Below, piece by piece: positions 612 through 61,928 of a stretch of 64,000 nucleotides of DNA. The DNA lies in the NCBI RefSeq assembly GCF_032444005.1, contig NC_091282.1, forward strand, positions 669,228,001 to 669,292,000, written 5' to 3'. Position 1 is the stretch's first letter; each line of letters starts with the position of its first letter. The position numbers and the translations under genes were made by a program. Origin of the DNA: Ranitomeya imitator. Its lineage: Eukaryota. The notes under the pieces are model-generated. The model saw only the letters and a list, made by a program, of their open reading frames with translations. It had not been told where the DNA came from and made no database searches.

Positions 612-2112
612 ATGATGGATACCACCCAAACGAGCTACACAGGACAGATTTTTATCAAGAACTTATCTTGTCATGGACGACCTCAAAAGAGAGGGACAGG
701 AAACCAAGACTTAAGAAAATCATACCAACTGCGTGGACACCTCTCACCAAATATGAATGAGAAGACATGTACTGTTGTTCTCACTCGGCTGGAAGATGTA
801 ACGGGGTCCCGCATTATTGAAAGTCAGGGCAGGAAATCCTCGAATATCTCTTGTTGGGTAGATGAATTTGGAACTCTAAAAGTTCACACTGGGCTTCCCT
901 CAGAACCTAGAAGAATGGGTTCAAAAGGACAACTTTTCCCAGGGGCATCTACTGGAGACAGTTCAATAAAGGAGTTGCCAGAACCTCGAAAGAGAAGATT
1001 AGCTTCTCTCAACGCCGAGGCAGTGAATAATTTACTTTTTGAGAGGGATGATGGTTGTTCTTCCAGGAAACTTAATAAAGATTTAAGCAAAGTTGTCGAA
1101 AACCGCAAATCAATTGTGGACTGGACTTCTTTAAAAAAGCTGGATGACCACCCGTCCAGCAAAAAAAGCAAGCAGAGATGCATAGCCCAACATAGGTCAA
1201 CTTCAGACGACGTGTTTGACGACCGCATCAAGAGAGAAGCTAGCGAAGTGTCTTATCCTCCTGCGCCAAAGAGGTTGGCGAGTTTAAATGCCGTGGCATT
1301 CCTGAAGCTTAACAATGAGAAAGGTCATGCACTGAGACAAAGGAGCAAGTCGAATGGGGACAGTGGACGTTCTTCTGTCAATACTTGCTCGAAATCCAAA
1401 CTGAAGATAACAAAATCTCACAAAAAGAACTGCATAAAACCTAAAAAAGACTACCTTCATCAGAAAACAGAGGACTACCGTGGTTGGCGTGGAGGATCGG
1501 ACATTGGATTTTTACAACCGGAACGTCAAGCGTTGACAAAATGTTTGGGTAAAGTGGAGGGTGTTCACGTGGAACAGTCTTCCAAAAAACACAATGGCTC
1601 CGGACCTTTGTACCACAGACTGCCTTTAATGGGAGGGCAGGCTTCTATGAAGCCAGAGTATGGACGACCGGGCGAAAAGTCTCCCACTCCCAAGCAAGAC
1701 TTCCAGCAGCCTTCATTTCCAGTACAACAGCTTCATCATTTGCCGGTTCCAGGAAGCCACACAGATTGCATCTGTGACTGTGACTCCTCAAATCAAGCTT
1801 CTCTAGATGGAAGCTACATTTCTTATGGCCAAAGTGGATTACAACGTAATGGATACTCACATTACTCCTTGTATCCAAAGGACGAAGCGTTTTCACAGCC
1901 AGAGCACTGTGAGGAACTCTTAGCTTCACAGAGCTCTTTACATCCTAGTGCAATGTGTGAGCATCTTCCTTGGTGCAGTTCTCGCTACGCCTACGGAGAA
2001 GACACCGGCACAAATACAGATAGTCTTTGTGGACTGATAAGGCTGCCACTTGGCAGGGTTAGCACTCACATGGGACCTAGTACCTATCCATATAAAAAGC
2101 CTTTAACACCAG
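612..2112 (+). CDS. BAHD1: BAHD1 first coding exon (large N-terminal exon)
   Basis: Motifs PRKRRLASLNAEA, PAPKRLASLNAVAFLKL and LPLMGGQASMKPE match BAHD1. Donor CCAG|GTATGT at 2113 is phase 1. The start codon could be 612 or 615. Confidence 0.92.
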
Positions 2113-4427
2113 GTATGTTCATAAAGTCTAAAAATAAAAGCTGAAAGTTATATTTCTACTGAATTAGTTGATGAGCGGAAATCTTCACCGCCCCACTTAC
2201 GGGAATGTGTGCTACTGTTTTGTTCTGTCGTCCTCCTAATGTAATGTCATATCTTAGTAATACTCTGTCGCGAGATGCCGCTATAATGTATAGTGTGGAG
2301 TCAGCCAAGTCCCTGATCTGTAAGTTATTGTTTTTGCTCTGGTCCCAGTAGATCTGTTTCCAGCATTTGCTCCGTGTTCCTCTTTTGCGCTGTCCTCCCT
2401 TGTATAAGGCTTTCCCATTGACTATAAAGGTGCGGTTCCACAAAGGTTAGGACTGAAAAAGTGTAAAAGTTTTTATAGGTCTCTTCTCTATAGGAAAGAG
2501 AATGGAATATGCGGACACTGAGAACTTGTCGCTTAGGAAAAACCCTTTCTTCGGTAATTGCCAAGATTTGGCCACCTCCTCTACAGTGCAGATAGACGCG
2601 ATCTGTAGAGCTGCCATTTTTGGAGCAGATGGCTGTCAGTCAGCAATGCTATGTTATATTTGCAGCTTCCAAGATTTCACATATTCCCCAGTTCACAAGT
2701 CTGCGTAGTGTACTAGCGTGGGAACTAGAGTCCATTATGGGCAGACTTCTCCTGCAAATTCCAGTGATCAGGCCATGGAAGAAGCCATCACAGTATACGG
2801 CCAGCTCATGTCTATCCGTCCAAGGATTTACCGCCACATTTTGTTTTTTCATACATGCGGTTTAAGAGCTGTAAACTCTTTTCTCATTCAGTTACTCATG
2901 TCATTTTTGCCGCTTTTTTGGTGACACACGGGGCTCCCTTCTATGTCATTGTTGTATTCTTTTTTTTTTGGGGTGGGCTAATATTGGTGGAAATATGCAG
3001 GAAATAAGTGTCTTTTTTCCCATTTATTTATTCTGACAACTAAAACACTGTACATTTAAAAATGTGTTCCCCATTTGGTAACAAATGTATTTAAATATGG
3101 GAGACGTTATTTGTTTTTGGGGGGTTTTACGGGGCGGCGGCTAGTTACAGCTATTTGGATTGACGGTGGCATTTTAAAAAAAAAAAATTTTACCTGTTTT
3201 TTTTTTTTTTATTTGAATTATTTTTCATTTATTTTACATATGGATATAAAAGACTTTTGGGGGGCATTTTAAATATTGAAATATTTTTTTTATTTCCCTT
3301 GTAACTGGGGCTGGAATATTATCCCCAGTTACAGGGGAAATTCCGCCTCCTGATTGCATAGCAGTGCTGTGTGCGTCACCCATGACCCAGCAGCCCCGGC
3401 TCCCTCACTATACCGTGATCACATGACCGCTGTGTATGGCGGACGAAGCGCTGTCAGCACCTTCTGTTACTGCGTACACATCATTTTAGTGCTGTGTATG
3501 TAGCAATGGAGAAGACCATACGGTTATATTCCATCTCTGCCTTCTCCATGGAGACTCTGGCTCTCGCAGCTACTTGATCACATGTAGCGGTGATGCTATA
3601 CAATGGCATTTTAGAACACCACTGCAGAGTGGGAGCCGGACCGACTGGATGCTTAAAATCTATGGGCAGCAGAAGGTGTGACAATCATAAATGAGTGTCC
3701 GTTCTTCCACATAAGTTATCTAAAGGATCACTAAACCTGGAAATGAAGCTTGAAATTTAACAAGAAATGGAGTTTAGTTTGTCAGTTTTGTGATCCAGTA
3801 GTCAGTCATGTAGAAATCCTGCTTAAAACAAGTGTATGCCCCTCTAATCATTTCCACCTTCAATGGGTAACCGGCTAAAGCTCCAGCCCCAATCCATAGG
3901 GAGAGGGTTAGTGATGTTTTGTCCTAGTGCGGACAGTGAAGAGGGGGAGGCTCCTGCTGCAGCCAGTTGTCTTTCCGGAAGAGGAGGGACGTGGCTGTTT
4001 TCTGGGGACATGCATATTTTTTTTTTCTATTTCTCAGCTTTAATTGTAAGATAGAACAACTTAGTTTTCTCCTTTTTAAGTCTAAGGGATCATTTTTTGC
4101 CATATTGTATATTTTTGGACTTACAATGTTGTTTTTTTTTCTTAGCAATAAAATTGTGGGAGCTATCTGAAGTCAGCCCTCTCCTTACCACTTCCTTTGC
4201 CAGATCACTGAGAGAACTATGTTGGAATCATAGCCACACAGTTTCCTCTAGCCCCTATGGTCTATGTCAGGGGCGCACTCCCATGTCCACTGAGCACTGA
4301 TATGTTGGTGCAGTATATGACACGATCATGTGACTGTCATTGTTTTTAGGGACACTACCATAAATCATTAAAGGTAATAGACCCCTCTGCTTCCATGGAC
4401 CACGAGGCGATATTTTAATTTGTTCTA

Positions 4428-9238: not shown

Positions 9239-10824
9239 GCCTACAAGTAGTATTCAACCCCCTGCAGATTTAGCAGGTTTAATAAGATGCAAATAAGTTA
9301 GAGCCTTCAAACTTCAAACAAGAGCAGGATATATTAACAGATGCATAAATCTTACAAACCAAAAAGTTTTGTTGCTCAGTTAAATTTTTATAAATTTTAA
9401 ACATAAAAGTGGGTCAATTATTATTCAACCCCTAGGTTTAATATTTTGTGGAATAACCTTTGGTTGCAATTACAGCTACTAATCGTCTTTTATAAGACCT
9501 GATCAGGCCGGCACAGGTCTCTGGAGTTATCTTGGCCCACTCCTCCATGCAGATCTTCTCCAAGTTATCAAGGTTCTTTGGGTGTCTCATGCGGACTTTA
9601 ATCTTGAGCTCCTTCCACAAGTTTTCAATTGGGTTAAGGTCAGGAGACTGACTAGGCCACTGCAACACCTTGATTTTTTGCCTCTTGAACCAGGCCTTGG
9701 TTTTCTTGGCTGTGTGCTTTGGGTCGTTGTCTTGTTGGAAGATGAAATGACGACCCATCTTAAGATCCTTGATGGAGGAGCGGAGGTTCTTGGCCAAAAT
9801 CTCCAGGTAGGCCGTGCTATCCATCTTCCCATGGATGCGGACCAGATGGCCAGGCCCCTTGGCTGAGAAACAGCCCCACAGCATGATCCTGCCACCACCA
9901 TGCTTGACTGTAGGGATGGTATTCTTGGGGTCGTATGCAGTGCCATCCAGTCTCCAAACGTCATGTGTGTGGTTGGCACCAAAGATCTCGATCTTGGTCT
10001 CATCAGACCAGAGAACCTTGAACCAGTCAGTCTCAGAGTCCTCCAAGTGATCATGAGCAAACTGTAGACGAGCCTTGACATGACGCTTTGAAAGTAAAGG
10101 TACTTTACGGGCTCGTCTGGAACGGAGACTATTGCGGTGGAGTACGTTACTTATGGTATTGACTGAAACCAATGTCCCCACTGCCATGAGATCTTCCCGG
10201 AGCTCCTTCCTTGTTGTCCTTGGGTTAGCCTTGACTCTTCGGACAAGCCTGGCCTCGGCACGGGAGGAAACTTTCAAAGGCTGTCCAGGCCGTGGAAGGC
10301 TAACAGTAGTTTCATAAGCCTTCCACTTCCGGATGATGCTCCCAACAGTGGAGACAGGTAGGCCCAACTCCTTGGAAAGGGTTTTGTACCCCTTGCCAGC
10401 CTTGTGACCCTCCACGATCTTGTCTCTGATGGCCTTGGAATGCTCCTTTGTCTTTCCCATGTTGACCATGTATGAGTGCTGTTCACAAGTTTGGGGAGGG
10501 TCTTAAATAGTCAGAAAAGGCTGGAAAAAGAGATAATTAATCCAAACATGTGAAGCTCATTGTTCTTTGTGCCTGAACTACTTCTTAATACTTTAGGGGA
10601 ACCAAACAGAATTCTGGTGGGTTGAGGGGTTGAATAATAAATGACCCCCTGAAAAGACTTTTCACAATTTAAAAAAAAAATAAACAAAGAAATAACATTC
10701 TTTTTTGCTGCAGTGCATGTCACACTTCCAGGCTGATCTACAGTCCAAATGTCAGAATGCCAAGTTAATTCCAAATGTGTAAACCTGCTAAATCTGCAGG
10801 GGGTTGAACACTACTTGTAGGCAC

Positions 10825-10913: not shown

Positions 10914-12513
10914 TGGGGCAAAAAAGTATTTAGTCAGTCAGCAATAGTGCAAGTTCCACCACTTAAAAAGATGAGAGGCGTCTGTAATTTACATCATGGG
11001 TAGACCTCAACTATGGGAGACAAACTGAGAAAAAAAATCCAGAAAATCACATTGTCTGTTTTTTTAACATTTTATTTGCATATTATGGTGGAAAATAAGT
11101 ATTTGGTCAGAACCAAAATTTCATCTCAATACTTTGTAATATATCCTTTGTTGGCAATGACAGAGGTCAAACGTTTTCTGTAAGTCTTCACAAGGTTGCC
11201 ACACACTGTTGTTGGTATGTTGGCCCATTCCTCCATGCAGATCTCCTCTAGAGCAGTGATGTTTTTGGCTTTTCGCTTGGCAACACGGACTTTCAACTCC
11301 CTCCAAAGGTTTTCTATAGGGTTGAGATCTGGAGACTGGCTAGGCCATTCCAGGACCTTGAAATGCTTCTTACGAAGCCACTCCTTCGTTGCCCTGGCGG
11401 TGTGCTTTGGATCATTGTCATGTTGAAAGACCCAGCCACGTTTCATCTTCAATGCCCTTGCTGATGGAAGGAGGTTTGCACTCAAAATCTCACGATACAT
11501 GGCCCCATTCATTCTTTCATGTACCCGGATCAGTTGTCCTGGCCCCTTTGCAGAGAAACAGCCCCAAAGCATGATGTTTCCACCACCATGCTTTACAGTA
11601 GGTATGGTGTTTGATGGATGCAACTTAGTATTCTTTTTCCTCCAAACACGACAAGTTGTGTTTCTACCAAACAGTTCCAGTTTGGTTTCATCAGACCATA
11701 GGACATTCTTCCAAAACTCCTCTGGATCATCCAAATGCTCTCTAGCAAACTTCAGACGGACCCGGACATGTACTGGCTTAAGCAGTGGGACACGTCTGGC
11801 ACTGCTGGATCTGAGTCCATGGTGGCGTAGTGTGTTACTTATGGTAGGCCTTGTTACATTGGTCCCAGCTCTCTGCAGTTCATTCACTAGGTCCCCCCGC
11901 GTGGTTCTGGGATTTTTGCTCACCGTTCTTGTGATCATTCTGACCCCACGGGGTGGGATTTTGCGTGGAGCCCCAGATCGAGGGAGATTATCAGTGGTCT
12001 TGTATGTCTTCCATTTTCCAATTATTGCTCCCACTGTTGATTTCTTCACTCCAAGCTGGTTGGCTATTGCAGATTCAGTCTTCCCAGCCTGGTGCAGGGC
12101 TACAGTTTTGTTTCTGGTGTCCTTTGACAGCTCTTTGGTCTTCACCATAGTGGAGTTTGGAGTCAGACTGTTTGAGGGTGTGCACAGGTGTCTTTTTATA
12201 CTGATAAGTTTAAAAAGGTGCCATTACTACAGGTAATGAGTGGAGGAAAGAGGAGACTCTTAAATAAGAAGTTACAGGTCTGTGAGAGCCAGAAATCTTG
12301 ATTGTTTGTTTCTGACCAAATACTTATTTTCCACCATAATATGCAAATAAAATGTTAAAAAAAACAGACAATGTGATTTTCTGGATTTTTTTTTCTCAGT
12401 TTGTCTCCCATAGTTGAGGTCTACCTATGATGTAAATTACAGACGCCTCTCATCTTTTTAAGTGGTGGAACTTGCACTATTGCTGACTGACTAAATACTT
12501 TTTTGCCCCACTG
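10911..12513 (-). mobile_element. Full-length Tc1 transposon with ~200-bp TIRs (ZB-like)
   Basis: TA|CAGTGGGGCAAAAAAGTATTTAGTCAG ... CTGACTAAATACTTTTTTGCCCCACTG|TA. TIRs at 10911-11112 and 12310-12513 are nearly identical. Length 1603 bp. Confidence 0.95.
11126..12148 (-). CDS. Intact Tc1 DD34E transposase, 340 aa
   Basis: [14 protein letters not shown]... [23 protein letters not shown] with 34-residue spacing. No stops or frameshifts. Confidence 0.95.
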
Positions 12514-19607: not shown

Positions 19608-20428
19608 TTAAAAGAACAGGGGCAGCAGCATTTTTTTCCCCTCCACAGCAGCACTGCCATCTATCTGCAGTGTAGGGAAGTGCAACACAGCCCGATGTAT
19701 GTGAAAGAAGCAGCTCCCTGTACAGCAGTGCCACTTTGACAGTAAAAATGATGGAGAATTGACCCCATAACTGAGCGTATTTACTCCATTGTATAATAAT
19801 TGGGAATATCCCTTTAAAATAAAAAAGTAATATTTGCAGATTATTTAATAATACGGAAAATCTGATGGTTCAGAACCTAACCTGTCACTTTTAGGTTGCA
19901 TTCATTTATATCTTCAGTTTTAAAGCTGAAGTCTTAAACAGGTAAAGTTTTACTTTTATTCTTCTTCCACATATGTAGCAAATATTTTGTGTACCTGCCT
20001 GAAATCGGCTGGGGAAGGAGTTCGGCAAGATGGAAAGCCCCCAAGGCAAATGTTAGGATTTTTTTCAGCTTTGTGGTATTGTGCTTTAGGGTAGTGTGGT
20101 GCCACCTGCAGGTCATTTTTCCTTACTGCAGTTTTATGAAAATTAATATTTAAAATGTATTTTGTGATAACATCGTGGATGTGTGGTTTGTTTTGCTATT
20201 TTCTTACTGACAAGTTTACCTTTGAAATGGTGTATCGTGTGTGTGTGTGTGTGGGTGCAGAATGAACGGAGATACAAAGGAATCACAGTAATAGTGTTTT
20301 GAAATAATGTAGAAGGATTTATTTTACAAGTGGATGTAAAGGACATGCTGAGCTAAAACTAGTCTGGCCAGTTTTCACACTTCTAACATGTTAAGATAAA
20401 GCCTAAACTATCTAGAAAAAAGTGCGTG

Positions 20429-22014
20429 TGTAACAACTCTGCTGGCATCACGGCATGGCCTCACATCTCTCACACAATCTTACCCACTGCTCCAGGTCAT
20501 GATGTGGTTTCTGTTTCATGCCAGCTCCATGTTCTGTGTCTCTGCTCTCTGCATGCCTCATGGCTATGTGTATAGGGGGCCGGCGCCTGAACTCTCTGGT
20601 TCTTATAGGAATCGGGTGCATCTGTCCAATCAGTTCATGACCAATTATCAAGAGGCTTCCTGTATATAGTGCAGCTCCACCCTGTGCTCTGGGCCTGTGC
20701 AATGTGTTTGCTCAGTTAGTGTTTTGCTTCTGAGTTTGCCTGGCCTTGCTCTGTGTTGCTCCCTCTCTGGAGGCTTTTCTCTGTGCATTTGCCTTTATCT
20801 TTGTCCGCCCTCCAGGAGGCAGAATATCCTGGTCCCTGTGTCTTTGTCCTTGTGTCTTGTTCCATTGCCTTGTCTGTACTTGGTCTTGTCTCGGTCTCCT
20901 TGTGTGTGCCTTCCTTCCCTGCTGTGTCTTTCCTTGTGTTCTCGGTCTGCTTGCACTCCGCACTCTTGCGGCTCTGCCTGCTCTGCATCTTGGTGGCTTA
21001 GCCGCTGCTCCGCACTTCTGCGGTTCTGCTCCGTCTTGCTCTGCTCCGCTCCCGTTGCTGCAGAAACCTCTTGCTGCAATTCCTCTCTGCAATCCTTGCG
21101 GTTCCACTCTGCTTAGCTTCTGCAGTATCTCTTGCTGCAGCTTCTCTCCACATTCTTTGTGGCTCTGCTCAGCTTTTGTCGCTACGCTACCGCTTGCTGC
21201 TTTTCCATTCCTATCTGCAGTCTTTCATTCCTCTCCTGTGTGAACAGGTCCCTACCTGTTCCTCAACTATATATCCCTACCTGTTCCTTCATCTCACTCA
21301 CAATTGGACTGCACTCGGGTGTCATCTGAGTGCAGCCTGATTCTAATATTTCATCAGCTAGTCCTGTGTTTCCTGCCGTCCTAGCCAGTCCTGTCTCCTG
21401 CCGTCCTAAGTCAGTTCTGTCTCCTGCCGTCCTAGCAAGCCCTGTGTTCTCTGCCGTGTCTCTGCCAGCCCTGTGTTCCAAACTACAAATCTGTACCTGC
21501 ACGTCCAGTGTGAACAGGCCCTTACCTGTTCCTTCATATACCACATCAACCAGTCCTGTGTTCTCTGCCGTGCCTCCCAATCCTGTGTTCCTGCCAGTCC
21601 TGCCGTTCCTGCCCTGCCTTCCAGTCCTGTGTTCCTGCTGTCCTAGCCAGTCCTGTTTCCTGCCGTGTCTCTGCCAGCCCTGTGTTCTCTGCCGTGTCTC
21701 TGCCAGCCCTGTCTCAGCTGTGCCAGCCTACTCGTCTGTGTTCCAGCCGTGCTCTTCTGCCAGTCCTGCCTAATGCCCGCACCAATCCTGGTCTTCCTGT
21801 CTCCCAAGTGGGATCAGCAGCCACAGCCAGACACCACCCTGGAGTAGCACCTGGCAGCTGCCTGCTGCACAAGCCTGTCCTCACCATCAGAGGCTCCAGT
21901 GAAAACCCAGGCAGCTGTCATAGTCACGCCCCTTCCAGGGTAGTCTGGCTTGTGGCACAGTGGGGCCACAAAACCCCCGAGCTCACGCCCACCAGTCAGG
22001 GCGCGAGCGTAACA
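20429..22014 (+). repeat. 5' LTR (1586 bp)
   Basis: Direct repeat of 23993-25580. CCAAT boxes at 20626 and 20641, TATATA at 20663, and an internal CCAGTCCTGTGTTCCTGCC tandem array. Confidence 0.92.
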
Positions 22015-22028
22015 GTTTTGCACAGGCC

Positions 22029-23981
22029 ATGGCCTCCGCTGTATCCCATGTCCTACCGCTCGCAGAGCATGATGAACTTTCTTTCTACCAGTGTGAGCAA
22101 GCTGAAGAATTTGTTCCGCGCTGTGTCGTTCCAATTGAGGAGACCTCGGGCCCAATCATAATTTCTAATGCCCTCTACGATCAACTTCGGGCCTATGAGG
22201 AGGAGCACGACCCAGCTGACCCACCTAGGTTCTATGGGAATCCAGAGGAATGCCAAAGCTTCCTGGAACAGTGCTTGCGCTACATTCTGCAGAATGCAGC
22301 TTGTTTTCCCTCTGACCAGATTAAGGTGGCCTACATCATGTCCTACCTAGCAGGAGATGCGTTATTATGGATTTGTCCCCTCTGGGAAGCAGGGGATCCT
22401 ATCGTCATGAGTCTTGGGGCCTTCCTGGTGGCCTTCCGTAAAGTCTTTGACAAGCTTCGTCCTGCTGCTCCTGTGAAGTCTTCCCCATCTAGATCCGAGA
22501 GGCGCTCCAGACGGGCGAAACCCGTGAAGAAACCTCCACGTCAAGCCATGACTGTCTGTGATCCTCCAGTTCCTCTACCCGTTAAAGCAGCTACTCTAAT
22601 AGAACCCAAAAAGACTGTCAAGAGTGGACTGGCAAAGCATCAGTCTAAGACCAGTCGTAAGAAGGGCCTACTATGTCGCTGCTGTTGTGAGGAACACCTG
22701 GAAGACCTCTGTCCAGGGGATCTAAAGCTCCAAAACCTCGGGCCAGTAGGAGAGACTGCCCTTGGTGAGAATAACTCCCTTCCGCTAAAGTCTGAGTCTG
22801 TTCCAGTGCCTTGTGGGAGCTTCGGTCCTGCAGATGTGTTAAAGCTGCTAACCAGACGGAGTCTAAGTGTGATTCCTGTTCCACTGCTCCAGAATCCTGT
22901 GAAGGTGTTTGGTGATTGCCGAGTCCTACTTATGAACAGTCCAGTGTTGAAGGGACAACTACAGCTCCAAATCGGAGCATTGTATGCGGAGAGATTTGTT
23001 TTCCACTGGTTGACCAGTCCGCCCGTCGGTCGTTCTGAACCGGATACTCTGCTGCCCGTTCCGGTCCAAAGACCCAGCGTGGTTCTGCGTTTGGAACTAT
23101 CAAGTCTCCAGAAGTTTCTTGTTCCTAAACTGCTAGGTCAATCTACAGTGTTGATATCTTCTCCACCTAATCAGCTGGCTATTGAGTCACAGTGTGCTGA
23201 CCTCACTGAAGTAAAGAAAGCAGTGGCGTCCTCTCCGTACACCTCCAGTGACCAGTTCCCAGGAACATCCCTGTCACTTAAAAAATTTTCCCTGAACTTT
23301 GGGAAGAAGATGCTTCCTGTAATGATGCCTTCAGATTCCATGTGGCAGGTGGATGAAGAAGTTGAAGCTGAAGCTCTTCCATCTCTGTTCTTCACCAGTC
23401 CGGAGGAAGAGATGGTCCAGTTTTGTCTGAGTAACAAGCTGATGGGGCTTCCTGAATGTATGTCTTCTGCTTCCAAGTGGCTACTTGATACTAAGACAGA
23501 GACTTACTCATCCTCTAATCTAGAAGAGGAGGTCCAGTTTTTTCAGGGTACCAGGCTGAAGATGTTTCCTGTATGTATGCCTCCAGTTTCCATCTGGCTA
23601 TTTGGTGAAGATCCCAAGACAGAAGTATTCTCATCTCTGCTTTCCACCGGTCTAAAGGAGAAGGTCCAATTTTCTTGTAATGATGGGCTTAAGTTGGATC
23701 CAGTGAACGTGTCTTCAGTTCCCAAGGAATCACATTATGTTGTGGTCAAATCGCAAGCTTCCAAGTCCCTGCTTTCAATTAACCAGGTGAAAGAAGTCCT
23801 GGCCCTTGTGTCTTCTGTGTGGGAAGCTGATCGTACTGGACTCAAAGAGACTGAGCATCCTGAGATCTCTAATGTCTCAAATACCTCATTCTACGAGAGG
23901 AATGTTGTGATGGCTATGACTGTGTGCTCCTATCCTTCTTCTACAGGTTGTTCTGGCGGGCTTGAAGAGGAGGGGCCGTAA
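22029..23981 (+). CDS. Gag-like protein with long C-terminal extension containing degenerate ~40-aa repeats (650 aa)
   Basis: GCCATGG start 14 nt after the LTR. Capsid-like block PPRFYGNPEECQSFLEQC...VAYIMSYLAGDALLW...FLVAFRKVFD (PEG10/RTL1/sushi-type) and variant zinc knuckle CRCCCEEHLEDLCP. No PR, RT, RH or IN motifs. Confidence 0.8.
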   Translation: MASAVSHVLPLAEHDELSFYQCEQAEEFVPRCVVPIEETSGPIIISNALYDQLRAYEEEHDPADPPRFYGNPEECQSFLEQCLRYILQNAACFPSDQIKVAYIMSYLAGDALLWICPLWEAGDPIVMSLGAFLVAFRKVFDKLRPAAPVKSSPSRSERRSRRAKPVKKPPRQAMTVCDPPVPLPVKAATLIEPKKTVKSGLAKHQSKTSRKKGLLCRCCCEEHLEDLCPGDLKLQNLGPVGETALGENNSLPLKSESVPVPCGSFGPADVLKLLTRRSLSVIPVPLLQNPVKVFGDCRVLLMNSPVLKGQLQLQIGALYAERFVFHWLTSPPVGRSEPDTLLPVPVQRPSVVLRLELSSLQKFLVPKLLGQSTVLISSPPNQLAIESQCADLTEVKKAVASSPYTSSDQFPGTSLSLKKFSLNFGKKMLPVMMPSDSMWQVDEEVEAEALPSLFFTSPEEEMVQFCLSNKLMGLPECMSSASKWLLDTKTETYSSSNLEEEVQFFQGTRLKMFPVCMPPVSIWLFGEDPKTEVFSSLLSTGLKEKVQFSCNDGLKLDPVNVSSVPKESHYVVVKSQASKSLLSINQVKEVLALVSSVWEADRTGLKETEHPEISNVSNTSFYERNVVMAMTVCSYPSSTGCSGGLEEEGP

Positions 23982-23992
23982 AGGGGGGGTAC

Positions 23993-25580
23993 TGTAACAT
24001 CTCTGCTGGCATCACGGCATGGCCTCACATCTCTCACACAATCTTACCCACTGCTCCAGGCCATGATGTGGTTTCTGTTTCATGCCAGCTCCATAGTCTG
24101 TTCCTCTGCTCTGTGCATGCCTCATGGCTATGTGTATAGGGGGCCGGCGCCTGAACTCTCTGGTTCTTATAGGAATCAGGTGCATCTGTCCAATCAGTTC
24201 CTGACCAATTACCGAGCGGCCTCCTGTATATAGTGCAGCTCCACCCTGTGGTCTGGGCCTGTGCAATGTGTTTGCTCAGTTAGTGTTTTGCTTCTGAGTT
24301 TGCCAGGTCTAGCTCTGTGTTGCTCCCTCTCTGGAGGCTTTTCTCTGTGCATTTGCCTTTATCTTTGTCCGCCCTCCAGGAGGCAGAATATCCTGGTCCC
24401 TGTGTCTTTGTCCTTGTGTCTTGTTCCATTGCCTTGTCTGTACTTGGTCTTGTCTCGGTCTCCTTGTGTGTGGCTTCCTTCCCTGCTGTGTCTTTCCTTG
24501 TGTTCTCGGTCTGCTTGCACTCCGCACTCTTGCGGCTCTGCCTGCTCTGCATCTTGGTGGCTTAGCCGCTGCTCCGCACTTCTGCGGTTCTGCTCCGTCT
24601 TGCTCTGCTCCGCTCCCGTTGCTGCAGAAACCTCTTGCTGCAATTCCTCTCTGCAATCCTTGCGGTTCCACTCTGCTTAGCTTCTGCAGTATCTCTTGCT
24701 GCAGCTTCTCTCCACATTCTTTGTGGCTCTGCTCAGCTTTTGTCGCTACGCTACCGCTTGCTGCTTTTCCATTCCTATCTGCAGTCTTTCACTCCTCTCC
24801 TGTGTGAACAGGTCCCTACCTGTTCCTCCAAACTATATATCCCTACCTGTTCCTTCATCTCACTCACAATTGGACTGCACTCGGGTGTCATCTGAGTGCA
24901 GCCTGATTCTAATATTTCATCAGCTAGTCCTGTGTTTCCTGCCGTCCTAGCCAGTCCTGTCTCCTGCCGTCCTAAGTCAGTTCTGTCTCCTGCCGTCCTA
25001 GCAAGCCCTGTGTTCTCTGCCGTGTCTCTGCCAGCCCTGTGTTCCAAACTACAAATCTGTACCTGCACGTCCAGTGTGAACAGGCCCTTACCTGTTCCTT
25101 CATATACCACATCAACCAGTCCTGTGTTCTCTGCCGTGCCTCCCAATCCTGTGTTCCTGCCAGTCCTGCCGTTCCTGCCCTGCCTTCCAGTCCTGTGTTC
25201 CTGCTGTCCTAGCCAGTCCTGTTTCCTGCCGTGTCTCTGCCAGCCCTGTGTTCTCTGCCGTGTCTCTGCCAGCCCTGTCTCAGCTGTGCCAGCCTACTCG
25301 TCTGTGTTCCAGCCGTGCTCTTCTGCCAGTTCTGCCGAATGCCCGCACCAATCCTGGTCTTCCTGTCTCCCAAGTGGGATCAGCAGCCACAGCCAGACAC
25401 CACCCTGGAGTAGCACCTGGCAGCTGCCTGCTGCACAAGCCTGTCCTCACCATCAGAGGCTCCAGTGAAAACCCAGGCAGCTGTCATAGTCACGCCCCTT
25501 CCAGGGTAGTCTGGCTTGTGGCACAGTGGGGCCACAAAACCCCCGAGCTCACGCCCACCAGTCAGGGCGCGAGCGTAACA
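23993..25580 (+). repeat. 3' LTR (1588 bp)
   Basis: Direct repeat of the 5' LTR, followed by TSD GCGTG. Confidence 0.92.
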
Positions 25581-26506
25581 GCGTGTGTGTATATATACAC
25601 ACAGTAGGGGAAATAAGTACTGTTTTTAAGTATTTGATTATATATAAAATACATTTTTTTAATTTTATTTTTTAATACATTACAAAATGTTCAATTTTGC
25701 TATGTAATCTGACAGCAGCATGATGTAGGGGCAGAGACACAGATGACAACGATGTATCACTTACTAGGCTTTGTTTTGCAGTTTCAATACAATGTGTTTT
25801 ATCAGCAGGAGATTATCACTAATTACTAGATGTCTTGTAACTCCTGTTCCAACCACATCCTGACCACTGATTAGTCGTTACACAGCAGTACATCTGTAGC
25901 AAAGAAAACTGTGATTGTATCACCACTTCTGCACCCAATAAATAAAGGGATACATTGCTGGAATCTGGGTCTCTGCCCCTACATCCTGGTACTCTCAGAT
26001 GTGGTAGCTAAAACTAGGGAACAAATTCCCTTTAAGAAAACAATGGGAAGCCACTTTTCCAAATAACACTTATCTTCAAAACTGCTGGTAACCTGATTTT
26101 TCTTTTAAAGTTCCTCTCTCAAGTTGAAAGCCTGCAGTATGCAGTATTGTGGACTATCGCCAAACATCACTCAGTGCCGCAGCCTCCTTTACTGTCTATC
26201 TTTTTTTTATTTACCTGCCATACGTGCTTGTGACCACTGCAGCCAATCACAAGAACACCAAAGTCGGTGATTGGCTACAACAGTCATGTGGATGTAAGTG
26301 ATATCATTGCTGCAGGATAAGTAAACCGGGGACTGTAGAAAACCCCTTTAATGCTGGGACTATCTGCATTCGGGGTTGTACCAAAAAGCCTGATTGGGAA
26401 TCTGGTCTGCACTGTGAGTTAACCCTTTTAATATGATGACTTTTCTTTTTGGAATTACTCTAATTTCCCTTCTGTCCCAATATACATTCATAGGAGACCT
26501 CTTTAA

Positions 26507-47800: not shown

Positions 47801-49379
47801 ACACTTTGACCCCTTCACAAACAAAGAATTCGCACGCAGGACCTGGAACACCATTCTAACCTGCTTCACGTGAGACTCCCAATCATCCGAGAAGACCAAA
47901 ATATCATCCAAGTAAGCAATCAGGAATTTATCCAGGTACTCTCGGAGGATGTCATGCATAAAGGACTGAAATACTGATGGAGCATTGGAAAGCCCGAATG
48001 GCATAACCAGGTACTCAAAATGGCCCTCGGGCGTATTAAATGCTGTTTTCCATTCATCGCCCTGTTTAATACGCACAAGACTATACGCACCACGAAGATC
48101 TATCTTGGTGAACCAACTAGCCCCCTTAATCCGAGCAAACAAATCAGACAGCAGCGGCAAGGGGTACTGAAATTTGACCGTGATTTTATTTAGAAGGCGG
48201 TAATCAATACAAGGTCTCAACGAACCATCCTTCTTGGCCACAAAAAAGAACCCTGCCCCCAATGGCGACGATGACGGGCGAATATGACCCTTCTCCAAGG
48301 ATTCCTTTACGTAACTCCGCATAGCGGCGTGCTCAGGTACAGACAAATTCAACAGTCGACCTTTAGGAAACTTACTACCAGGAATCAAATCGATAGCACA
48401 ATCGCAATCCCTATGCGGAGGTAGGGCACTGGACTTGGGTTCATCAAATACATCCCGGTAATCTGACAAGAACTCTGGGACCTCAGAAGGGGTGGATGAT
48501 GAAATAGACAGAAATGGGACATCACCATGTACCCCCTGACAACCCCAGCTGGACACAGACATTGATTTCCAATCCAATACTGGGTTATGGACTTGTAGCC
48601 ATGGCAACCCCAACACGACCACATCATGCAGATTCTGCAACACCAAAAAGCGAATATCCTCCTGATGGGCAGGAGCCATGCCCATGGTCAGTTGGGTCCA
48701 ATACTGAGGCTTATTCTCGGCCAAAGGCGTAGCATCAATTCCTCTCAATGGAATAGGATGCTGCAAGGGCTCCAAGAAAAACCCACAGCGCCTAGCATAC
48801 TCCAAGTCCATCAAATTCACCTGAGGAAGGAAACTCAGAAGCCGCAGCCCCACTCACATCCACCAGAGGAAGCTCATAGACAGAACCAGCCGATGTACCA
48901 CTCATGACCACAGGAGGGAGCTTGACCACAGAATTCACAACACTTTGCGGTCAGCACAAAAACCTACAAACAACCACGCAGAGGGCGCAAAAAGACCCTC
49001 CGCACCGACTAACGGTACGGAGGTGCTTCCTCTGCGTCCCAGAGCTTCCAGCAAGCAAGACAAACCAATATAGCAAGCTGGACAGAAAAAATAGCAAACA
49101 AAAGTAACACAAGCAGAACTAAGCTTATGCAGGGCAGACAGGCCACAAGAGCGATCCAGGAGAGAGCAAGACCAATACTGGAAAATTGACTGGAGGCCAG
49201 GAACAAAGAACTAGGTGGCATTAAATAGAGCAGCACCTAACGACTTAACCTCGTCACCTGAGGAAGGAAACTCCGAAGCCGCAGCCCCACTCACATCCAC
49301 CAAAGGAAGCTCAAGGACAGAACCAGCCGAAGTACCACTCATGACCACAGGAGGGAGCTTGACCACAGAATTCACAACA
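44829..49379 (-). mobile_element. Ty3/Gypsy chromovirus (sushi-like) LTR retrotransposon with gag deleted
   Basis: Full 3' LTR at 44829-45649, PPT adjacent, 5' LTR fragments at 48819-48942 and 48943-49379, 6-bp TSD GGGGAA. Confidence 0.92.
45642..48818 (-). pseudogene. pol (protease-RT-RNase H-integrase-chromodomain), frameshifted near 47780
   Basis: RT: LRPCIDYR, YLDD. RNase H: VDASEIGAGAVL, TDHKNL. Integrase: GHPG...C..C, SMDF, SDRGSQF, GQTERTNQ, GPY. Chromodomain: YIVEKILDSR...YLVKWKGY. The two ORFs are in different frames. Confidence 0.92.
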
Positions 49380-49910: not shown

Positions 49911-50639
49911 TTATCTAGATGTGTTGTGAGAACTTTAAACCCCCAAGTGTTTCACTAAAGTTGATAACGCAGAGCCGTGAAAATAAAAAATCATTTTTTC
50001 CCACAAAAATGATTTTTTTAGCCTACAAATTTTTATTTTCATAAGGCAACAGGAGAAATTGGACCACAAAATTTGTTGTGGGGGTAAACTACTATTTGGG
50101 CGCACGGCAGAGCTCAGAGGGGAAGGACCACCATTTGACTCTTTCAATGGAAAATTGAGATTAGATGCCATGTCGCGTTTGGAGAGCCCCTGATGTGCCT
50201 AAACATTGGAAACCTCCCAATTCTAACTCCAACCCTAACTCCAACACACCCCTAATCCCAATCCAAACCATAACCCTGACACACCCCTCATCCTAATCCC
50301 AACCCCAATTTTAGCCCTAACCCTAATGGGAAAATGGAAATAAATTGTAGCAACCCTGCTGGCATCACTGCATGGCCTCCTATCCCCCACCTGCATTACA
50401 CTCAAACTCACTTCTCTGGGCCTTGTGGTGACTTCTCTCTGCTGCCAGCTCCATGCTGTGTGCCTCATGTCTGCTGTCTGCTCTGTGCATGCTCTGTCTG
50501 TGTGCATAGGGGGCGGCGCCGGCAACTCCTGTTTTTTATAGAGACTGTGTGCACCTTGCTAAGTTGTCCCTGGCCAATCGCCATGAGGCTTCCTGTATTT
50601 AAGACATCCCCACCCTTTGGTGGGGGCCTGTGCAACTAA

Positions 50640-51350
50640 AGGCCCTGTCACACATAGCGAGATCGCTAGCGAGATCGCTGCTGAGTCACAAGTTTTGTGA
50701 CGCAACAGCGATCTCAGTAGCGATCTCGCTATGTGTGACACGTACCAGCGATCAGGCCCCTGCTGTGAGATCGCTGGTCGTGTCGGAATGGCCTGGGCCA
50801 TTTTTTGATCGTTGAGGTCCCGCTGACATCGCTGAATCGGCGTGTGTGATGCCGATTCAGCGATGTCTTCGCTGGTAACCAGGGTAAACATCGGGTTACT
50901 AAGCGCAGGGCCGCGCTTAGTAACCCGATGTTTACCCTGGTTACCATCGTTAAAGTTAAAAAAACAAACGCTACATACTTACCTACCGCTGTCTGTCCCC
51001 GGCGCTCTGCTTCTCTGGTCTGGCTGTGAGCGGCGGGCAGCCGGAAAGCAGAGCACAGCGGTGACGTCACCGCTCTGCTTTCCGGCCGCTGTGCTCACAG
51101 CCAGAGCAGAGAAGCCCAGCGCCGGGGACAGACAGCGGTAGGTAAGTATGTAGCGTTTGTTTTTTTTAACTTTAACGATGGTAACCAGGGTAAACATCGG
51201 GTTACTAAGCGCGGCCCTGCGCTTAGTAACCCGATGTTTACCCTGGTTACCCGGGGACTTCGGCATCGTTGAAGACAGTTTCAACGATGCCGAAGTCTTT
51301 CCCCGGATCGTTGGTCGCTGGAGAGAGCTGTCTGTGTGACCTGTGGGCCT
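50640..51350. mobile_element. Harbinger-type MITE with nested internal palindromes
   Basis: AGGCCCTGTCACACA ... TGTGTGAC(ctgt)GGGCCT. Two copies of the hairpin GGTAACCAGGGTAAACATCGGGTTACTAAGCGC...GCGCTTAGTAACCCGATGTTTACCCTGGTTACC. Confidence 0.72.
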
Positions 51351-52439
51351 TTACTCCCTCAGTCAGTTCTTAGCTGCTGAGGTGCCAGGCCCTGTCTCGG
51401 TTACTCTCTCTTGTCTGCCACCCAGGGGGGCGTTGTACCCTGGTCTGTGTCCTGTGTAGCCACCCAGTGGGGCTTAGTACCCTGGCCTATGTTTTTGTGT
51501 AGCCACCCAGCGGGGCTTCGTACCCTGGCCTATGTCTGCCACCCAGAGGGGCATCGTACCCTGGCTTGTGTCTGTCTCTGTGTCTTGTCTCGTTCCTGAC
51601 TCTGTCTTAGTCTAGTCCTATTCCTCTGTCTGTTTATATCTCTGTCTTGGTTTGCCTGTTCTGCTGTGCATTCTCTGTGTCTTGCTTTGCTCCGCTTTCG
51701 GCTCCGCTCTCTGCGACCTTGCTTTGCTCCTTGCTCTGCAGTGACCTTGCTCGGCACTCTGTGTCTTGCTCTGCACTCAGCTCTGCACTCTGTGGCTTAG
51801 CTCTAGCTCTGCTCTCAGTAACTTTGCTCTGCACTCTGACCTTGCTATGCACTGTGGCTTCGCTCTGCACTCTGACCTTGCTCTCCACTCTGTGGCTTCG
51901 CTCTGCGGCTCCACTCCTTGCGGTTCTACCTGGCTCTGCTCTTTGCGGTTCTACTGCTCCAGCTCTTGGCTCCGCCTCCTGCGTTTCTGTGCTTGGCTCC
52001 GCCTCCTGCTCTTGGCTCTGCCTTCTGCGTTTCTGTTCCTATCTCTAGCTCCTGTGCTTTCGCTGTGCATCGGCTCTTGCGGTCTTCCCCTACCTTTTCT
52101 TAAGTCCTCCTGTCTGAACAGGTTCTTACCTGTTTTGCAGACCTGCCTGCAGTCTGGTCCCTACCGGTTCTTCCAGTGTACCAGCCTTGTCCACCTGTCT
52201 TGCCTGTGTCCCAGCCGTGCCCGCCTGTATGCTGGAGTGCCAGCCATGCCCGCTTGCCTGTCTATGTTCCGTTCCCCGGTGGGATCAGCAGCCACAGCCA
52301 GACATCACCCTGGAGTGGTACCTGGTAGCTTCCTATTGCACACGTCTGACCTCACCATCAGAGGCTCCAGCGAACACCTAGGAAGCTACTTAGTTACGCC
52401 CCTTCCAGGGAAGTTTGGTCTGTGGTCCAGTGGGGCCAC

Positions 52440-53185
52440 TGTTGTGAGTTCTGTTTTTGGGCTCCCTCTGGTGGTTACTGATGGTACTGGGTGACTTGTG
52501 TTCTCTGCGGTCTCTGGTGTCCACCTGTTCCATCAGGTTATGGGAGTTTCCTATTTAACCTGGCTTTTTTGTCATTTCCTCGCCGGCTAGCAATGTAATC
52601 AGCGTGTCTTTTTACCTCTGCTACCTGCGTCTGTTATCTTCAGGACAAGCTAAGTTTTGATTTTCCTGTTCTACGTTTTGCTTAATTTTTGTCTTAGTCC
52701 AGCTTGCAGATATGTGATTCCTTGCTGCTGGTTGCTCTAGTGGGCTGAAATTACTCCTCATGTTCCATGAGTTGGCACATGAGTTCAAGTAATTTCAGGA
52801 TGGTTTTTTGAAGGGTTTTTCGCTGACCGCGCAGTTCACTTTTGTATCCTCTGCTATCTAGCTTTAGCGGGCCTCATTTTTGCTGATTCTATTTTCATAA
52901 CTACGTATGTGCTTTCCTCTCATTTCACCGTTATTACATGTGGGGGGCTGCTATTTCTGTGGGGTGTTTCTCTGGAGGCAAGTGAGGTCTGTGTTTCTTC
53001 TAATAGGGGAAGTTAATCCTTCGGCTGGCACGAGACGTCTAGGAATCATCGTAGGCACGTTCCCCGGCTACTGCTAGTTGTGTGTTTAGGTTCAGGATCG
53101 CGGTCAGCTCAGGTTCCATCACCCTAGAGCTTGTTTTGTTTTTGTGCTTGTCCTTTTGTGATCCCCTGCCATTGGGATCATGACA
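52440..53185 (+). mobile_element. Solo LTR (TGTTGTGA... family)
   Basis: TG...CA termini, 6-bp TSD GGCCAC, and a start resembling the LTR of the 44829-49379 element. Confidence 0.8.
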
Positions 53186-54224
53186 GGCCACACCCCCGCA
53201 CGCCCGCGCCAACCAGTCTGGGCGCGTGCGTGACATAAATACATTTTTTTTTATTTTATTATTTTTCCATAAGAGGGTGATAAAGGGGGGTTTGGCGTAC
53301 TATTTATAGCAGGTTTTTATAGCGGATTTTTATGATTGGCAGCCGGCACACACTAAAAGACGCTCTTTATTGCAAATAATATTTTTTGCATCACCTCATT
53401 TTGAGAGCTATAATTTTTCAATATTTTGGTCCACAGAGTCATGTGAGGTCTTGTTTTTTGCGGGACGAGTTGATGTTTTTATTGGTAACATTTTCGGGCA
53501 CGTGACATTTTTTGATCGCTTTTTAATCCGATTTTTGTGAGGTAGAATGAACAAAAACCTGCAATTCATTAATTTCTTTTGGGGGAGGCGTTTATACCGT
53601 TCCGCATTTGGTAAAATTGATAAAGCAGTTTTATTCTTCTGGTCAGTACGATTGCAGCGATACCTCATTTATATATTTTTTATAATGTTTTGCCGTTTTT
53701 ATACAATAAAAACTATTTTATATAAAAAATAATTAGTTTTGCATCAATTTATTCTGAGAGCTATAACTTTTTTATTTTTCCGGTGATGGAGCTATATGGT
53801 GGCTTGTTTTTTGCAGGACAAGATGACGTTTTCAGCGGTACCACGTTTATTTATATCCTTCTTTTTGATCGCGTGTTATTCAACTTTTTGTTTGGCGGTA
53901 TGATGATAAAACATTTTTTTTTGCCTTTTTTTTTAATGGTGTTCACTAAAGGTGTTAACTATTGGGACAGTTTTATAGGTCGGGTCGTTACAGACACAGC
54001 AATACTAAATATGTGTACTTTTATTGTTTAGATTTTTTTTTTTAGTTCAAAAATTTATTTATTGACTGAATAGTACGTCCAATGCCAGAAAGGGGTTAAT
54101 GTCACTTTGATACAATCCTCCTTATTTTGCTTCAGATCTAGCAGAGCTTAAAGTGAACTTGTCGCCCCCAAAATCGAAGGTGAGCTAAGCCCACCAGCAT
54201 CAGGGGCTTATCTACAGCATTCTG

Positions 54225-61735: not shown

Positions 61736-61928
61736 TCACATTTTACAAATGACTTCTTGTAATATAGCAAGAAGGGAATTCAATGGAAATACTTAAATGA
61801 ATCAGAAAATCCACAGGGCTGGATTAAAGTTTAATAATAGAACCAGCGAAAAAAGATTGTAACTATATGGGATTATGTGTAGAATATCGGGTTACACACG
61901 CCTGGTGATATATCTCATCAACATCTCA

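What the first reader, a model, noticed from the sequence alone, without database searches (positions are those of the whole stretch)
20692..22028. Self-priming primer-binding site visible in the gag-only element
Seen: no TGG tRNA-type PBS follows the 5' LTR. Instead TTGCACAGGCC (22018-22028) is the exact reverse complement of GGCCTGTGCAA (20692-20702), which starts 29 nt after the first T of the LTR TATA box (20663), at the expected transcript start. Established: fission-yeast Tf1 primes with the first 11 nt of its own RNA, and this was proposed for vertebrate Tf1/sushi elements. Inference: tRNA-independent priming is retained, so the element keeps the cis signals for mobilisation.
Basis: partly seen in the sequence, partly recalled or inferred. 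Interest (0 to 1): 0.7.

Follow-up and report, generated by a model that had tools for sequence, protein, structure and literature searches.

The report
Self-priming site in frog gag-only retrotransposon
A poison-frog jumping gene that encodes only a coat protein carries, right after its left repeat, an 11-base site that pairs exactly with the predicted first 11 bases of its own RNA; this is the self-starting trick known from yeast Tf1 and fish sushi elements, so it is a tidy new example and not a new mechanism.

Summary
GGCCTGTGCAA (20692-20702) lies 29 nt after the first T of the LTR TATA box. It is the exact reverse complement of 22018-22028, which starts 3 nt after the 5' LTR and ends at the gag ATG. 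No TGG-type tRNA site lies next to the LTR.

- **Chance:** a match this good in this position is expected about 6 times in 10,000 (empirical null from the rest of the window).
- **Conservation:** a diverged solo LTR of a sister subfamily (50346-53235, U3 about 70% identical) keeps the 11-mer perfectly, again 29 nt after its TATA.
- **Structure:** stable hairpins sit just after the primer and just before the PBS. Folding gives the primer:PBS duplex in many contexts but not all.
- **Element:** it has a 5-bp TSD, TG..CA ends and a polypurine tract. A second copy of the same post-gag region exists in Ranitomeya imitator.

Best reading (about 0.7): Tf1/sushi-type self-priming kept in a non-autonomous element.

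Not tested: the transcript start, covariation across copies, and the match to frog tRNAs. The LTR also lacks any canonical poly(A) signal.

This scan has already noted self-priming in other retrotransposon families of this genome. Verdict: new member of a known kind.

The parts
20424..20428 (+). Target-site duplication GCGTG, left copy
   Evidence: Sequence read; the same 5 nt lie at 25581-25585.
20429..22014 (+). 5' LTR (1586 nt), TGTAACA...CGTAACA. CT-rich, with only 13.7% A.
   Evidence: There are 23 differences from the 3' LTR; 17 of them lie in 20436-20747.
20626..20645 (+). Two CCAAT boxes (20626-20630 and 20641-20645), about 65 and 50 nt before the predicted start
   Evidence: Sequence. 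The solo LTR also has a CCAAT upstream of its TATA. That these are promoter elements is inference.
20663..20669 (+). TATA box TATATAG
   Evidence: The solo LTR has TATTTAAG at the aligned place (50596).
20692..20702 (+). Predicted self-primer: the first 11 nt of the transcript (R start), GGCCTGTGCAA
   Evidence: Searches show the exact complement of 22018-22028. It is conserved 11/11 in the solo LTR at 50625-50635 with the same 29-nt spacing to the TATA. The start site itself was not mapped.
20710..20735 (+). Hairpin 7 nt after the primer, with stem GCUCAG/CUGAGU
   Evidence: -8.7 kcal/mol, z -2.4. The solo LTR folds the same stem, with the closing G.U replaced by C-G.
21981..22008 (+). GC-rich hairpin at the end of U5, 9 nt before the PBS (U5-IR-like)
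   Evidence: -18.1 kcal/mol, z -4.2, 0 of 200 shuffles fold as well. A hairpin also forms at the same place in the solo LTR (-20.6 kcal/mol, z -2.1).
22018..22028 (+). Primer-binding site TTGCACAGGCC. It starts 3 nt after the LTR and abuts the gag ATG.
   Evidence: The duplex with the primer is about -20.4 kcal/mol.
22029..23981 (+). Only ORF of the element, 650 aa. The Gag capsid domain is at residues 65-140. No pol domain is present.
   Evidence: One search gives the ORF. One search gives Pfam DUF4939, E 5.7e-9, 36.3 bits against a cutoff of 29. Residues 104-436 recur in the Ranitomeya imitator protein P0001.
23980..23989 (+). Polypurine tract AAAGGGGGGG. It overlaps the ORF stop codon and lies 3 nt before the 3' LTR.
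   Evidence: Sequence.
23993..25580 (+). 3' LTR (1588 nt), carrying its own copy of the 11-mer at 24256-24266
25581..25585 (+). Target-site duplication GCGTG, right copy
50346..53235 (+). Solo LTR of a sister subfamily (TSD TAAAT). It is interrupted by a MITE and by a 747-bp foreign solo LTR. It keeps the 11-mer at 50625-50635, 29 nt after the first T of TATTTAAG (50596).

Best explanation
The element 20429-25580 is a non-autonomous, gag-only LTR retrotransposon of a poison frog. It most likely starts reverse transcription as Tf1 does.

Proposed steps:
1. Pol II starts about 30 nt after the LTR TATA box, at 20691-20694 (inferred).
2. The first 11 nt of the RNA fold back over a 1.3-kb R-U5 leader and pair with the 11-nt site that follows the LTR (the pairing potential is shown).
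3. An RNase H supplied in trans by an autonomous relative cuts after nt 11 (inferred from Tf1).
4. The freed 3' OH primes minus-strand DNA through U5 and R (inferred).
5. Plus-strand strong-stop DNA copies the primer, so the PBS is rewritten from the primer in every cycle. This would explain why the match is perfect in a young copy (inference).
For: - **Match and position:** the 11/11 complement is at the stated coordinates. The primer arm lies 29 nt after the TATA and the PBS arm 3 nt after the LTR.
- **Chance:** the empirical probability for such a positioned pair is about 6e-4 (supporting figures).
- **No tRNA site:** no TGG occurs within 15 nt of the LTR. The TGG at 22030 would imply a tRNA that lacks the invariant T-arm bases (established tRNA knowledge).
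- **Conservation:** the sister solo LTR is about 70% identical in U3 and unalignable in the middle. It keeps the 11-mer perfectly at the same TATA distance.
- **Hairpins:** they flank the duplex.
- **Folding:** the primer:PBS duplex is the minimum-energy structure with P about 0.99 when the RNA ends at or before 22060. It also forms in 3 of 4 two-strand folds of the conserved ends.
- **Retrotransposition:** the TSD, TG..CA ends and PPT show a genuine reverse-transcribed insertion. R-U5 of the two LTRs differ by only about 0.5-0.7%.
- **Family:** the gag domain belongs to Pfam DUF4939. An Atlas lead points to FAM127A/RTL8-like clusters of the sushi-ichi-related family (PMC11011659).
- **Literature:** Tf1 uses its first 11 nt, with an RNase H cut between nt 11 and 12 (PMC7175516). 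Self-priming has been proposed for vertebrate Tf1/sushi elements (PMC6317226, PMC4600332, PMC10085805).
Against: - The transcript start is not mapped, and G20691/G20692 is not a textbook initiator.
- With longer 3' contexts the duplex is not the minimum-energy fold. It costs 1-11 kcal/mol more, so folding gives no decision.
- The only other family LTR in reach is a solo LTR without a PBS, so covariation is untested.
- The LTR has none of 12 common poly(A) hexamers. R, which strand transfer needs, therefore cannot be delimited.
- The CACAGG core of the PBS is the complement of CCTGTG, which I saw many times when reading the LTR. This raises the background, although the shuffles allow for it.
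- The primer and PBS are 1315 nt apart. From memory the distance in Tf1 is far shorter, on the order of 100-200 nt.
- No autonomous partner with the same LTR was seen.
Confidence: 0.7

Rival explanations
1. The pairing is real and under selection but is not a primer. Closing the leader from the 5' end to the sequence at positions -11 to -1 of the gag AUG would control translation, packaging or dimerisation, and minus-strand synthesis would be primed by something else, such as an internal tRNA fragment.
For: The PBS arm ends exactly at the ATG and covers the Kozak context CAGGCC-ATG-G. The duplex would bury both the cap-proximal bases and the start-codon context. GGCC is palindromic and recurs at 20742, 21964 and 22032, which allows alternative pairings.
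Against: No alternative PBS is visible between the LTR end and the ORF, because the whole spacer is 14 nt. In a large plant survey, half-tRNA primers were found only in Ty1/copia lineages (PMC6317226). The geometry is the Tf1 geometry: an 11-nt duplex whose 3' end points into U5 (PMC7175516).
Confidence: 0.1
2. The TATA-like motif at 20663 is not the promoter. Transcription would start further upstream, for example after TTATAGG at 20603, and the 11-mer would lie at the 3' end of a short R, just before a GT-rich downstream element (TGTGTTTG, 20703-20710). The PBS would then pair with the end of R and not with its start.
For: A GT-rich stretch directly follows the 11-mer, as at many R/U5 borders (PMC3601003 uses such stretches to place U5). 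No poly(A) hexamer exists further into the LTR. TTATAG is also conserved in the solo LTR.
Against: Neither TATATA nor the solo LTR's TATTTAAG is a known poly(A) hexamer, whereas both are acceptable TATA boxes. Their distance to the 11-mer is exactly conserved, and CCAAT boxes lie at about -50 and -65. No LTR element is known to prime from the 3' end of R.
Confidence: 0.1
3. Chance: an 11-nt inverted match with no function, produced by a CT-rich, CCTGTG-rich LTR.
For: An unpositioned complement of 11 nt or more occurs in 0.65-1.8% of controls. Short inverted pairs are common in this genome: about 270 of 11-13 nt within 1.7 kb per 105 kb.
Against: With both positional constraints the expectation falls to about 6e-4. 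The 11-mer and its TATA spacing are conserved in a sister LTR whose U3 is 30% diverged. Earlier notes of this scan report the same signature in other families of this genome; I did not test them.
Confidence: 0.07

Closest known systems
Tf1 / Tf2 of Schizosaccharomyces pombe (and Tj1, Tosmo, Tcry1)
   Same: The PBS just after the 5' LTR is complementary to the first 11 nt of the element's own RNA, and there is no tRNA primer. Extra helices lie next to the PBS (PMC7175516, PMC10085805, PMC4600332). The duplex here is also exactly 11 bp.
   Different: Here the primer and PBS are 1315 nt apart. The element has no RT, RNase H or integrase of its own. The three-duplex 'pretzel' could not be shown convincingly. 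The start site and the RNase H cut are not demonstrated.
Vertebrate Tf1/sushi elements (sushi-ichi of Takifugu and relatives; Butler et al. 2001, cited in PMC4600332, PMC6317226 and PMC10085805)
   Same: They are vertebrate Ty3/gypsy elements for which self-priming was proposed from the sequence. The gag here falls in the Pfam family of sushi-ichi-related Gag proteins. The LTR ends fit the published 3' motif CNTNACA (PMC3601003).
   Different: The group is defined by its pol phylogeny and an integrase chromodomain, and this element has no pol. Published Sushi LTRs show a clear AATAAA (PMC3601003); this LTR has none. I could not read the original paper.
Non-autonomous LTR retrotransposons that keep only gag or nothing (TR-GAG, LARD, TRIM; TRIMs in PMC6934838)
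   Same: They have LTRs, a PBS, a PPT and a TSD but no pol, so they depend on an autonomous partner.
   Different: As I recall, the described examples use tRNA-type primer sites. Here the primer is the element's own RNA, so the partner's RNase H would have to cut a foreign RNA.
Self-priming signatures noted earlier in this scan in other families of the same frog genome (s1-294759, s1-288122, s1-274983)
   Same: They show the same signature: the sequence about 30 nt after the TATA pairs with the element's own PBS.
   Different: They are different families on other DNA. I did not see their sequences, so they count as leads only.

Membership tests
Tf1-type self-priming LTR retrotransposons (mechanistic class) | The PBS directly downstream of the 5' LTR is complementary to the element's own LTR sequence. 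| tested here: met
   An 11/11 exact complement, with the PBS starting 3 nt after the LTR. The positioned chance expectation is about 6e-4.
Tf1-type self-priming LTR retrotransposons (mechanistic class) | The complementary stretch is the very 5' end of the transcript. | not testable with these tools
   This is only predicted: TATA+29, conserved in the sister LTR.
Tf1-type self-priming LTR retrotransposons (mechanistic class) | No PBS for a tRNA 3' end. | tested here: met
   No TGG occurs in the 15 nt after the LTR. The TGG at 22030 lies inside the ORF and does not fit the tRNA T-arm invariants (plus tRNA knowledge). There is no tRNA-like Rfam hit. A frog tRNA set was not available, so internal tRNA fragments are not excluded.
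Tf1-type self-priming LTR retrotransposons (mechanistic class) | A multi-duplex 'pretzel' / U5-IR structure around the primer:PBS duplex (PMC10085805). | tested here: inconclusive
   A U5 hairpin lies 9 nt before the PBS (z -4.2), there is a hairpin in R, and a helix 20741-50/21959-68 appears in some folds. The global fold changes with the chosen 3' end.
Tf1-type self-priming LTR retrotransposons (mechanistic class) | RNase H cut between nt 11 and 12 releases the primer. | not testable with these tools
   This needs biochemistry. Only the 11-bp length of the duplex agrees.
Tf1/sushi group of chromoviruses (phylogenetic group) | RT/RNase H/integrase that group with Tf1 and sushi, with a chromodomain at the integrase C-terminus. 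| tested here: inconclusive
   The element has no pol at all, so this feature cannot be scored. Only the gag domain gives a link (Pfam DUF4939; FAM127A/RTL8-like Atlas lead). A chromodomain pol fragment lies at 45642-48853(-), but its LTRs are unrelated.
LTR retrotransposon (general) | Two LTRs with TG..CA ends, a target-site duplication and a polypurine tract. | tested here: met
   The LTRs are 98.55% identical, the TSD is GCGTG, and the PPT AAAGGGGGGG lies 3 nt before the 3' LTR.

The most novel reading that the evidence does not exclude
The PBS arm occupies positions -11 to -1 of the only AUG and the primer arm is the cap-proximal 11 nt. The 1.3-kb fold-back could therefore act as a switch: an RNA that closes the duplex would be shut off for Gag translation and committed to priming. 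As the element has no RNase H, the cut after nt 11 would have to be made in trans on a foreign RNA. That would make this a case of parasitism on a self-priming machinery.
Probability: 0.15. Interest if true: 0.5.

Novelty: new member of a known kind. Interest (0 to 1): 0.3.

Why it matters
Self-priming has been shown experimentally only in fission-yeast elements. For vertebrates it rests on sequence signatures alone.

This copy is young and compact: its internal region is just PBS, ORF and PPT. It gives a clean vertebrate substrate on which the start site, the 11-nt primer and the long-range fold-back could be tested.

It also shows that a non-autonomous derivative can keep this kind of primer site. 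The mechanism itself is not new.

Tried and rejected

There is therefore no start-site mapping and no read-based view of family variation.

**Searches for more copies**
- The one metagenome scan, with a conserved 20-mer from U5, returned a single GC-rich bacterial contig that matches only those 21 nt. It is a chance hit.
- The viral-contig scan with the Gag protein found nothing.
- Two word-based protein searches found only two chimeric R. imitator gene models.
- I did not run the large protein search, because the claim does not rest on absence of relatives.

**Other blank checks**
- A PDB sequence search of the gag domain found nothing useful.
- Rfam at E up to 1 gave only a meaningless lncRNA hit in the LTR.
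- ARAGORN found no tRNA gene in the window, so the tRNA alternative could be judged only from general tRNA rules.

**Literature**
- Lin and Levin 1997/1998 and the Esnault-Levin review are not held. Butler et al. 2001 was seen only in the reference lists of other papers and was not looked up.

**Tests that could not decide**
- Whole-leader folding depends on the chosen 3' end.
- The chromovirus at 45-49 kb could not serve as a second test case, because its 5' part is rearranged and has no PBS.
- I considered a tiny R consisting of the 11-mer alone and rejected it. Cleaving off the primer would leave no homology for the first strand transfer.

Full report
**1. What is there**

The window holds an LTR element at 20429-25580.
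- Its LTRs are 20429-22014 (1586 nt) and 23993-25580 (1588 nt). They are 98.55% identical and have TGTAACA...CGTAACA ends.
- A 5-bp target-site duplication, GCGTG, lies at 20424-20428 and 25581-25585.
- The internal region is as compact as it can be. A 3-nt spacer (GTT) follows the LTR, then the 11-nt site 22018-22028, then an ORF from the ATG at 22029 to the TAA at 23979-23981.
- A polypurine tract, AAAGGGGGGG (23980-23989), overlaps the stop codon and lies 3 nt before the 3' LTR.
- The 650-aa product has one Pfam domain, DUF4939, at residues 65-140 (E 5.7e-9, 36.3 bits against a cutoff of 29). There is no protease, RT, RNase H or integrase.
- An Atlas look-up gave Ty3-type capsid clusters and a chordate cluster named FAM127A-like, which carries DUF4939 (a lead only). 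From my own knowledge, FAM127A is RTL8C, and RTL8 belongs to the sushi-ichi-related SIRH/RTL family (PMC11011659).
- The closest database proteins are two chimeric gene models of the poison frog Ranitomeya imitator. One covers residues 104-436, gag end plus the post-gag region, at 85% identity over the 375-residue local alignment; the mismatches cluster at its far end. At least one further copy with this post-gag region therefore exists.

**2. The observation**

It is correct to the base.
- GGCCTGTGCAA is at 20692-20702. Its exact reverse complement is at 22018-22028, and the 3' LTR has its own copy at 24256-24266.
- TATATAG begins at 20663, so the 11-mer begins 29 nt after the first T.
- Two CCAAT boxes lie at 20626-20630 and 20641-20645.
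- The complementarity cannot be extended by a single base on either side, so the duplex is exactly 11 bp (about -20.4 kcal/mol).
- No TGG lies between the LTR end and the ATG.
- The first TGG (22030) is inside the ORF. Read as a tRNA site, it would demand a tRNA without the invariant T-arm positions C61, A58, C56, U55 and U54. This is an argument from established tRNA structure, not from a database comparison.

**3. Is it more than chance?**

The LTR is CT-rich (13.7% A). When reading it I saw CCTGTG-like motifs many times, and these match the core of the PBS.
- An unpositioned match is not very rare. It occurs in 1.8% of dinucleotide shuffles of the LTR and for 0.65% of control 20-mers from the window.
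- Position changes the picture. In about 105 kb of control sequence (both strands) I found about 270 inverted pairs of 11-13 nt within 1.7 kb. Only about 6 of them were non-low-complexity pairs with the 5' arm 26-34 nt after a TATA-like hexamer.
- That gives about 6e-4 for such a pair whose 3' arm also starts within 10 nt of an LTR end.

**4. Comparative evidence inside the window**

BLAST of the element against the window found a second, diverged LTR.
- Once cleaned of two nested insertions, it is a solo LTR at 50346-53235 with TSD TAAAT.
- Its U3 is about 70% identical to the element's. The middle 1 kb is essentially unalignable, and the last 210 nt or so are about 85% identical.
- Within this divergence the block GGGCCTGTGCAA is perfectly kept. 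It again starts 29 nt after the first T of the TATA box, here TATTTAAG at 50596. The sequence between TATA and 11-mer, and the sequence just after the 11-mer, both differ.
- This is conservation, not covariation: a solo LTR has no PBS.

Two local structures are also retained.
- **Hairpin after the primer (20710-20735).** It lies 7 nt after the primer (-8.7 kcal/mol, z -2.4). Its closing G.U pair is C-G in the solo LTR.
- **Hairpin before the PBS (21981-22008).** It is GC-rich and lies 9 nt before the PBS (-18.1 kcal/mol, z -4.2, 0 of 200 shuffles as good). A counterpart forms in the solo LTR.
- The second hairpin sits where Tf1 and retroviruses have the U5-IR stem-loop. I know this only from the titles and summaries cited in PMC4600332 and PMC10085805.

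**5. Folding**

- For the predicted leader from 20692, the primer:PBS duplex is the minimum-energy structure, with pair probabilities of 0.7-0.996, when the RNA ends at 22031-22060.
- When more of the ORF is included, other pairings win by 1-11 kcal/mol out of about -400.
- Two-strand folds of the conserved 5' and 3' ends give the duplex in 3 of 4 contexts. It is flanked by the two hairpins and by a helix 20741-50/21959-68.
- I take this as compatible with the self-priming reading, and no more than that.

**6. Mechanism**

In Tf1, the first 11 nt of the RNA pair with the PBS within a three-duplex structure, and RNase H cuts between nt 11 and 12 to release the primer (PMC7175516, PMC10085805). 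Self-priming is regarded as a shared feature of the Tf1/sushi group, including its vertebrate members (PMC6317226, PMC4600332).

The frog element fits that scheme in every respect that sequence can show. What is shown:
- the pairing potential;
- its position at both ends;
- its conservation in the sister LTR;
- the hallmarks of a true retrotransposition event.

What is inferred:
- the start site;
- the cut after nt 11;
- the use of the 11-mer as primer;
- the supply of RT, RNase H and integrase in trans.

One further inference follows from the mechanism. Plus-strand strong-stop DNA copies the primer, so the PBS is renewed from the primer at each cycle. A perfect match is then expected in a young copy.

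**7. Points that do not fit neatly**

- **No poly(A) signal.** The LTR has none of 12 common poly(A) hexamers, so R/U5 cannot be placed. A GT-rich stretch follows the 11-mer directly. This permits a rival reading in which the 11-mer ends a short R. I rate that at 0.1, because both TATA variants are good TATA boxes, neither is a known poly(A) signal, and CCAAT boxes lie at the right distance.
- **Uneven LTR divergence.** Of the 23 differences between the LTRs, 17 lie in 20436-20747 (5.4%) and only 6 in the remaining 1267 nt or so (0.5%). This looks like a conversion tract or an assembly mix of copies, not uniform ageing. It does not touch the 11-mers.
- **No partner found.** No autonomous element with these LTRs was seen. 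The chromodomain pol fragment at 45642-48853(-) has unrelated LTRs and lacks its 5' part.

**8. What could not be done**

- Scans of metagenome and viral contigs gave nothing related.
- As a result the start site, the covariation across copies and the comparison with frog tRNAs all remain open.

**9. Relation to earlier notes**

This scan has already recorded self-priming signatures in other Gypsy and BEL/Pao families of the same genome, and a snap-back product. I did not see those sequences and count them only as leads. They agree with the present reading and lower its novelty.

**10. Verdict**

It is a new member of a known kind. Confidence in self-priming is about 0.7 and interest is 0.3.

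Noticed in passing
window 20436-20747 against 20748-22014 (and the matching parts of the 3' LTR): Differences between the two LTRs are very unevenly spread. Seventeen of the 23 lie in U3 plus the first 55 nt after the 11-mer (5.4%), and only 6 in the other 1267 nt or so (0.5%). This suggests gene conversion of one LTR's 5' part by another copy, or an assembly mix of copies.
   Followed up: partly
window 20429-22014: The 1.6-kb LTR is only 13.7% A and contains none of 12 common poly(A) hexamers. Where the transcript ends, and so where R stops, is unexplained.
   Followed up: partly
window 22015-23992: The internal region is nothing but PBS, ORF and PPT. The PBS abuts the ATG and the stop codon overlaps the polypurine tract. 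The ORF has a near zinc-knuckle (CX2CX3HX4C) within residues 215-230, and internal repeats of about 77% identity at 23406-23487 and 23523-23604.
   Followed up: partly
window 50639-51351: A palindromic MITE of about 0.7 kb, with TA target duplication and inverted ends of the form AAGGCCC...GTCACACA, is inserted into the solo LTR 1 nt after the conserved 11-mer.
   Followed up: partly
window 52440-53186: A 747-bp solo LTR of another family (TGTTGTGAG...ATGACA, TSD GGCCAC) is nested in the solo LTR. It shares about 70% identity over 300 nt with 44938-45246 on the opposite strand, beside the chromovirus fragment, and its first bases resemble the start of that element's LTRs.
   Followed up: partly
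window 45213-49379, minus strand: A chromovirus fragment with RT, RNase H, integrase, Tf2-1-type SH3 domain and chromodomain (ORFs 47618-48853 and 45642-47804) but no gag or protease. The upstream LTR copy is cut short and is followed by a second 126-nt LTR start that runs into the RT ORF.
   Followed up: partly
window 9438-10469 and 11126-12148, minus strand: Two intact-looking Tc1/mariner transposase ORFs of the Sleeping Beauty type (HTH_SB, HTH_Tnp_Tc3_2, DDE_3).
   Followed up: no
window 61800-63956: A tandem array of at least 21 in-register starts at 93-nt spacing (period 93 nt), with about 92-94% identity between copies. It runs to near the end of the window.
   Followed up: no
window 612-2144, plus strand: A 510-aa ORF with no Pfam match.
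   Followed up: no
window 21357-21474 and 21593-21712: The middle of the LTR holds internal direct repeats of about 120 nt (82% identical), built from CCTGTG/CTGCC-type units. This is the part that is not conserved in the sister LTR.
   Followed up: no
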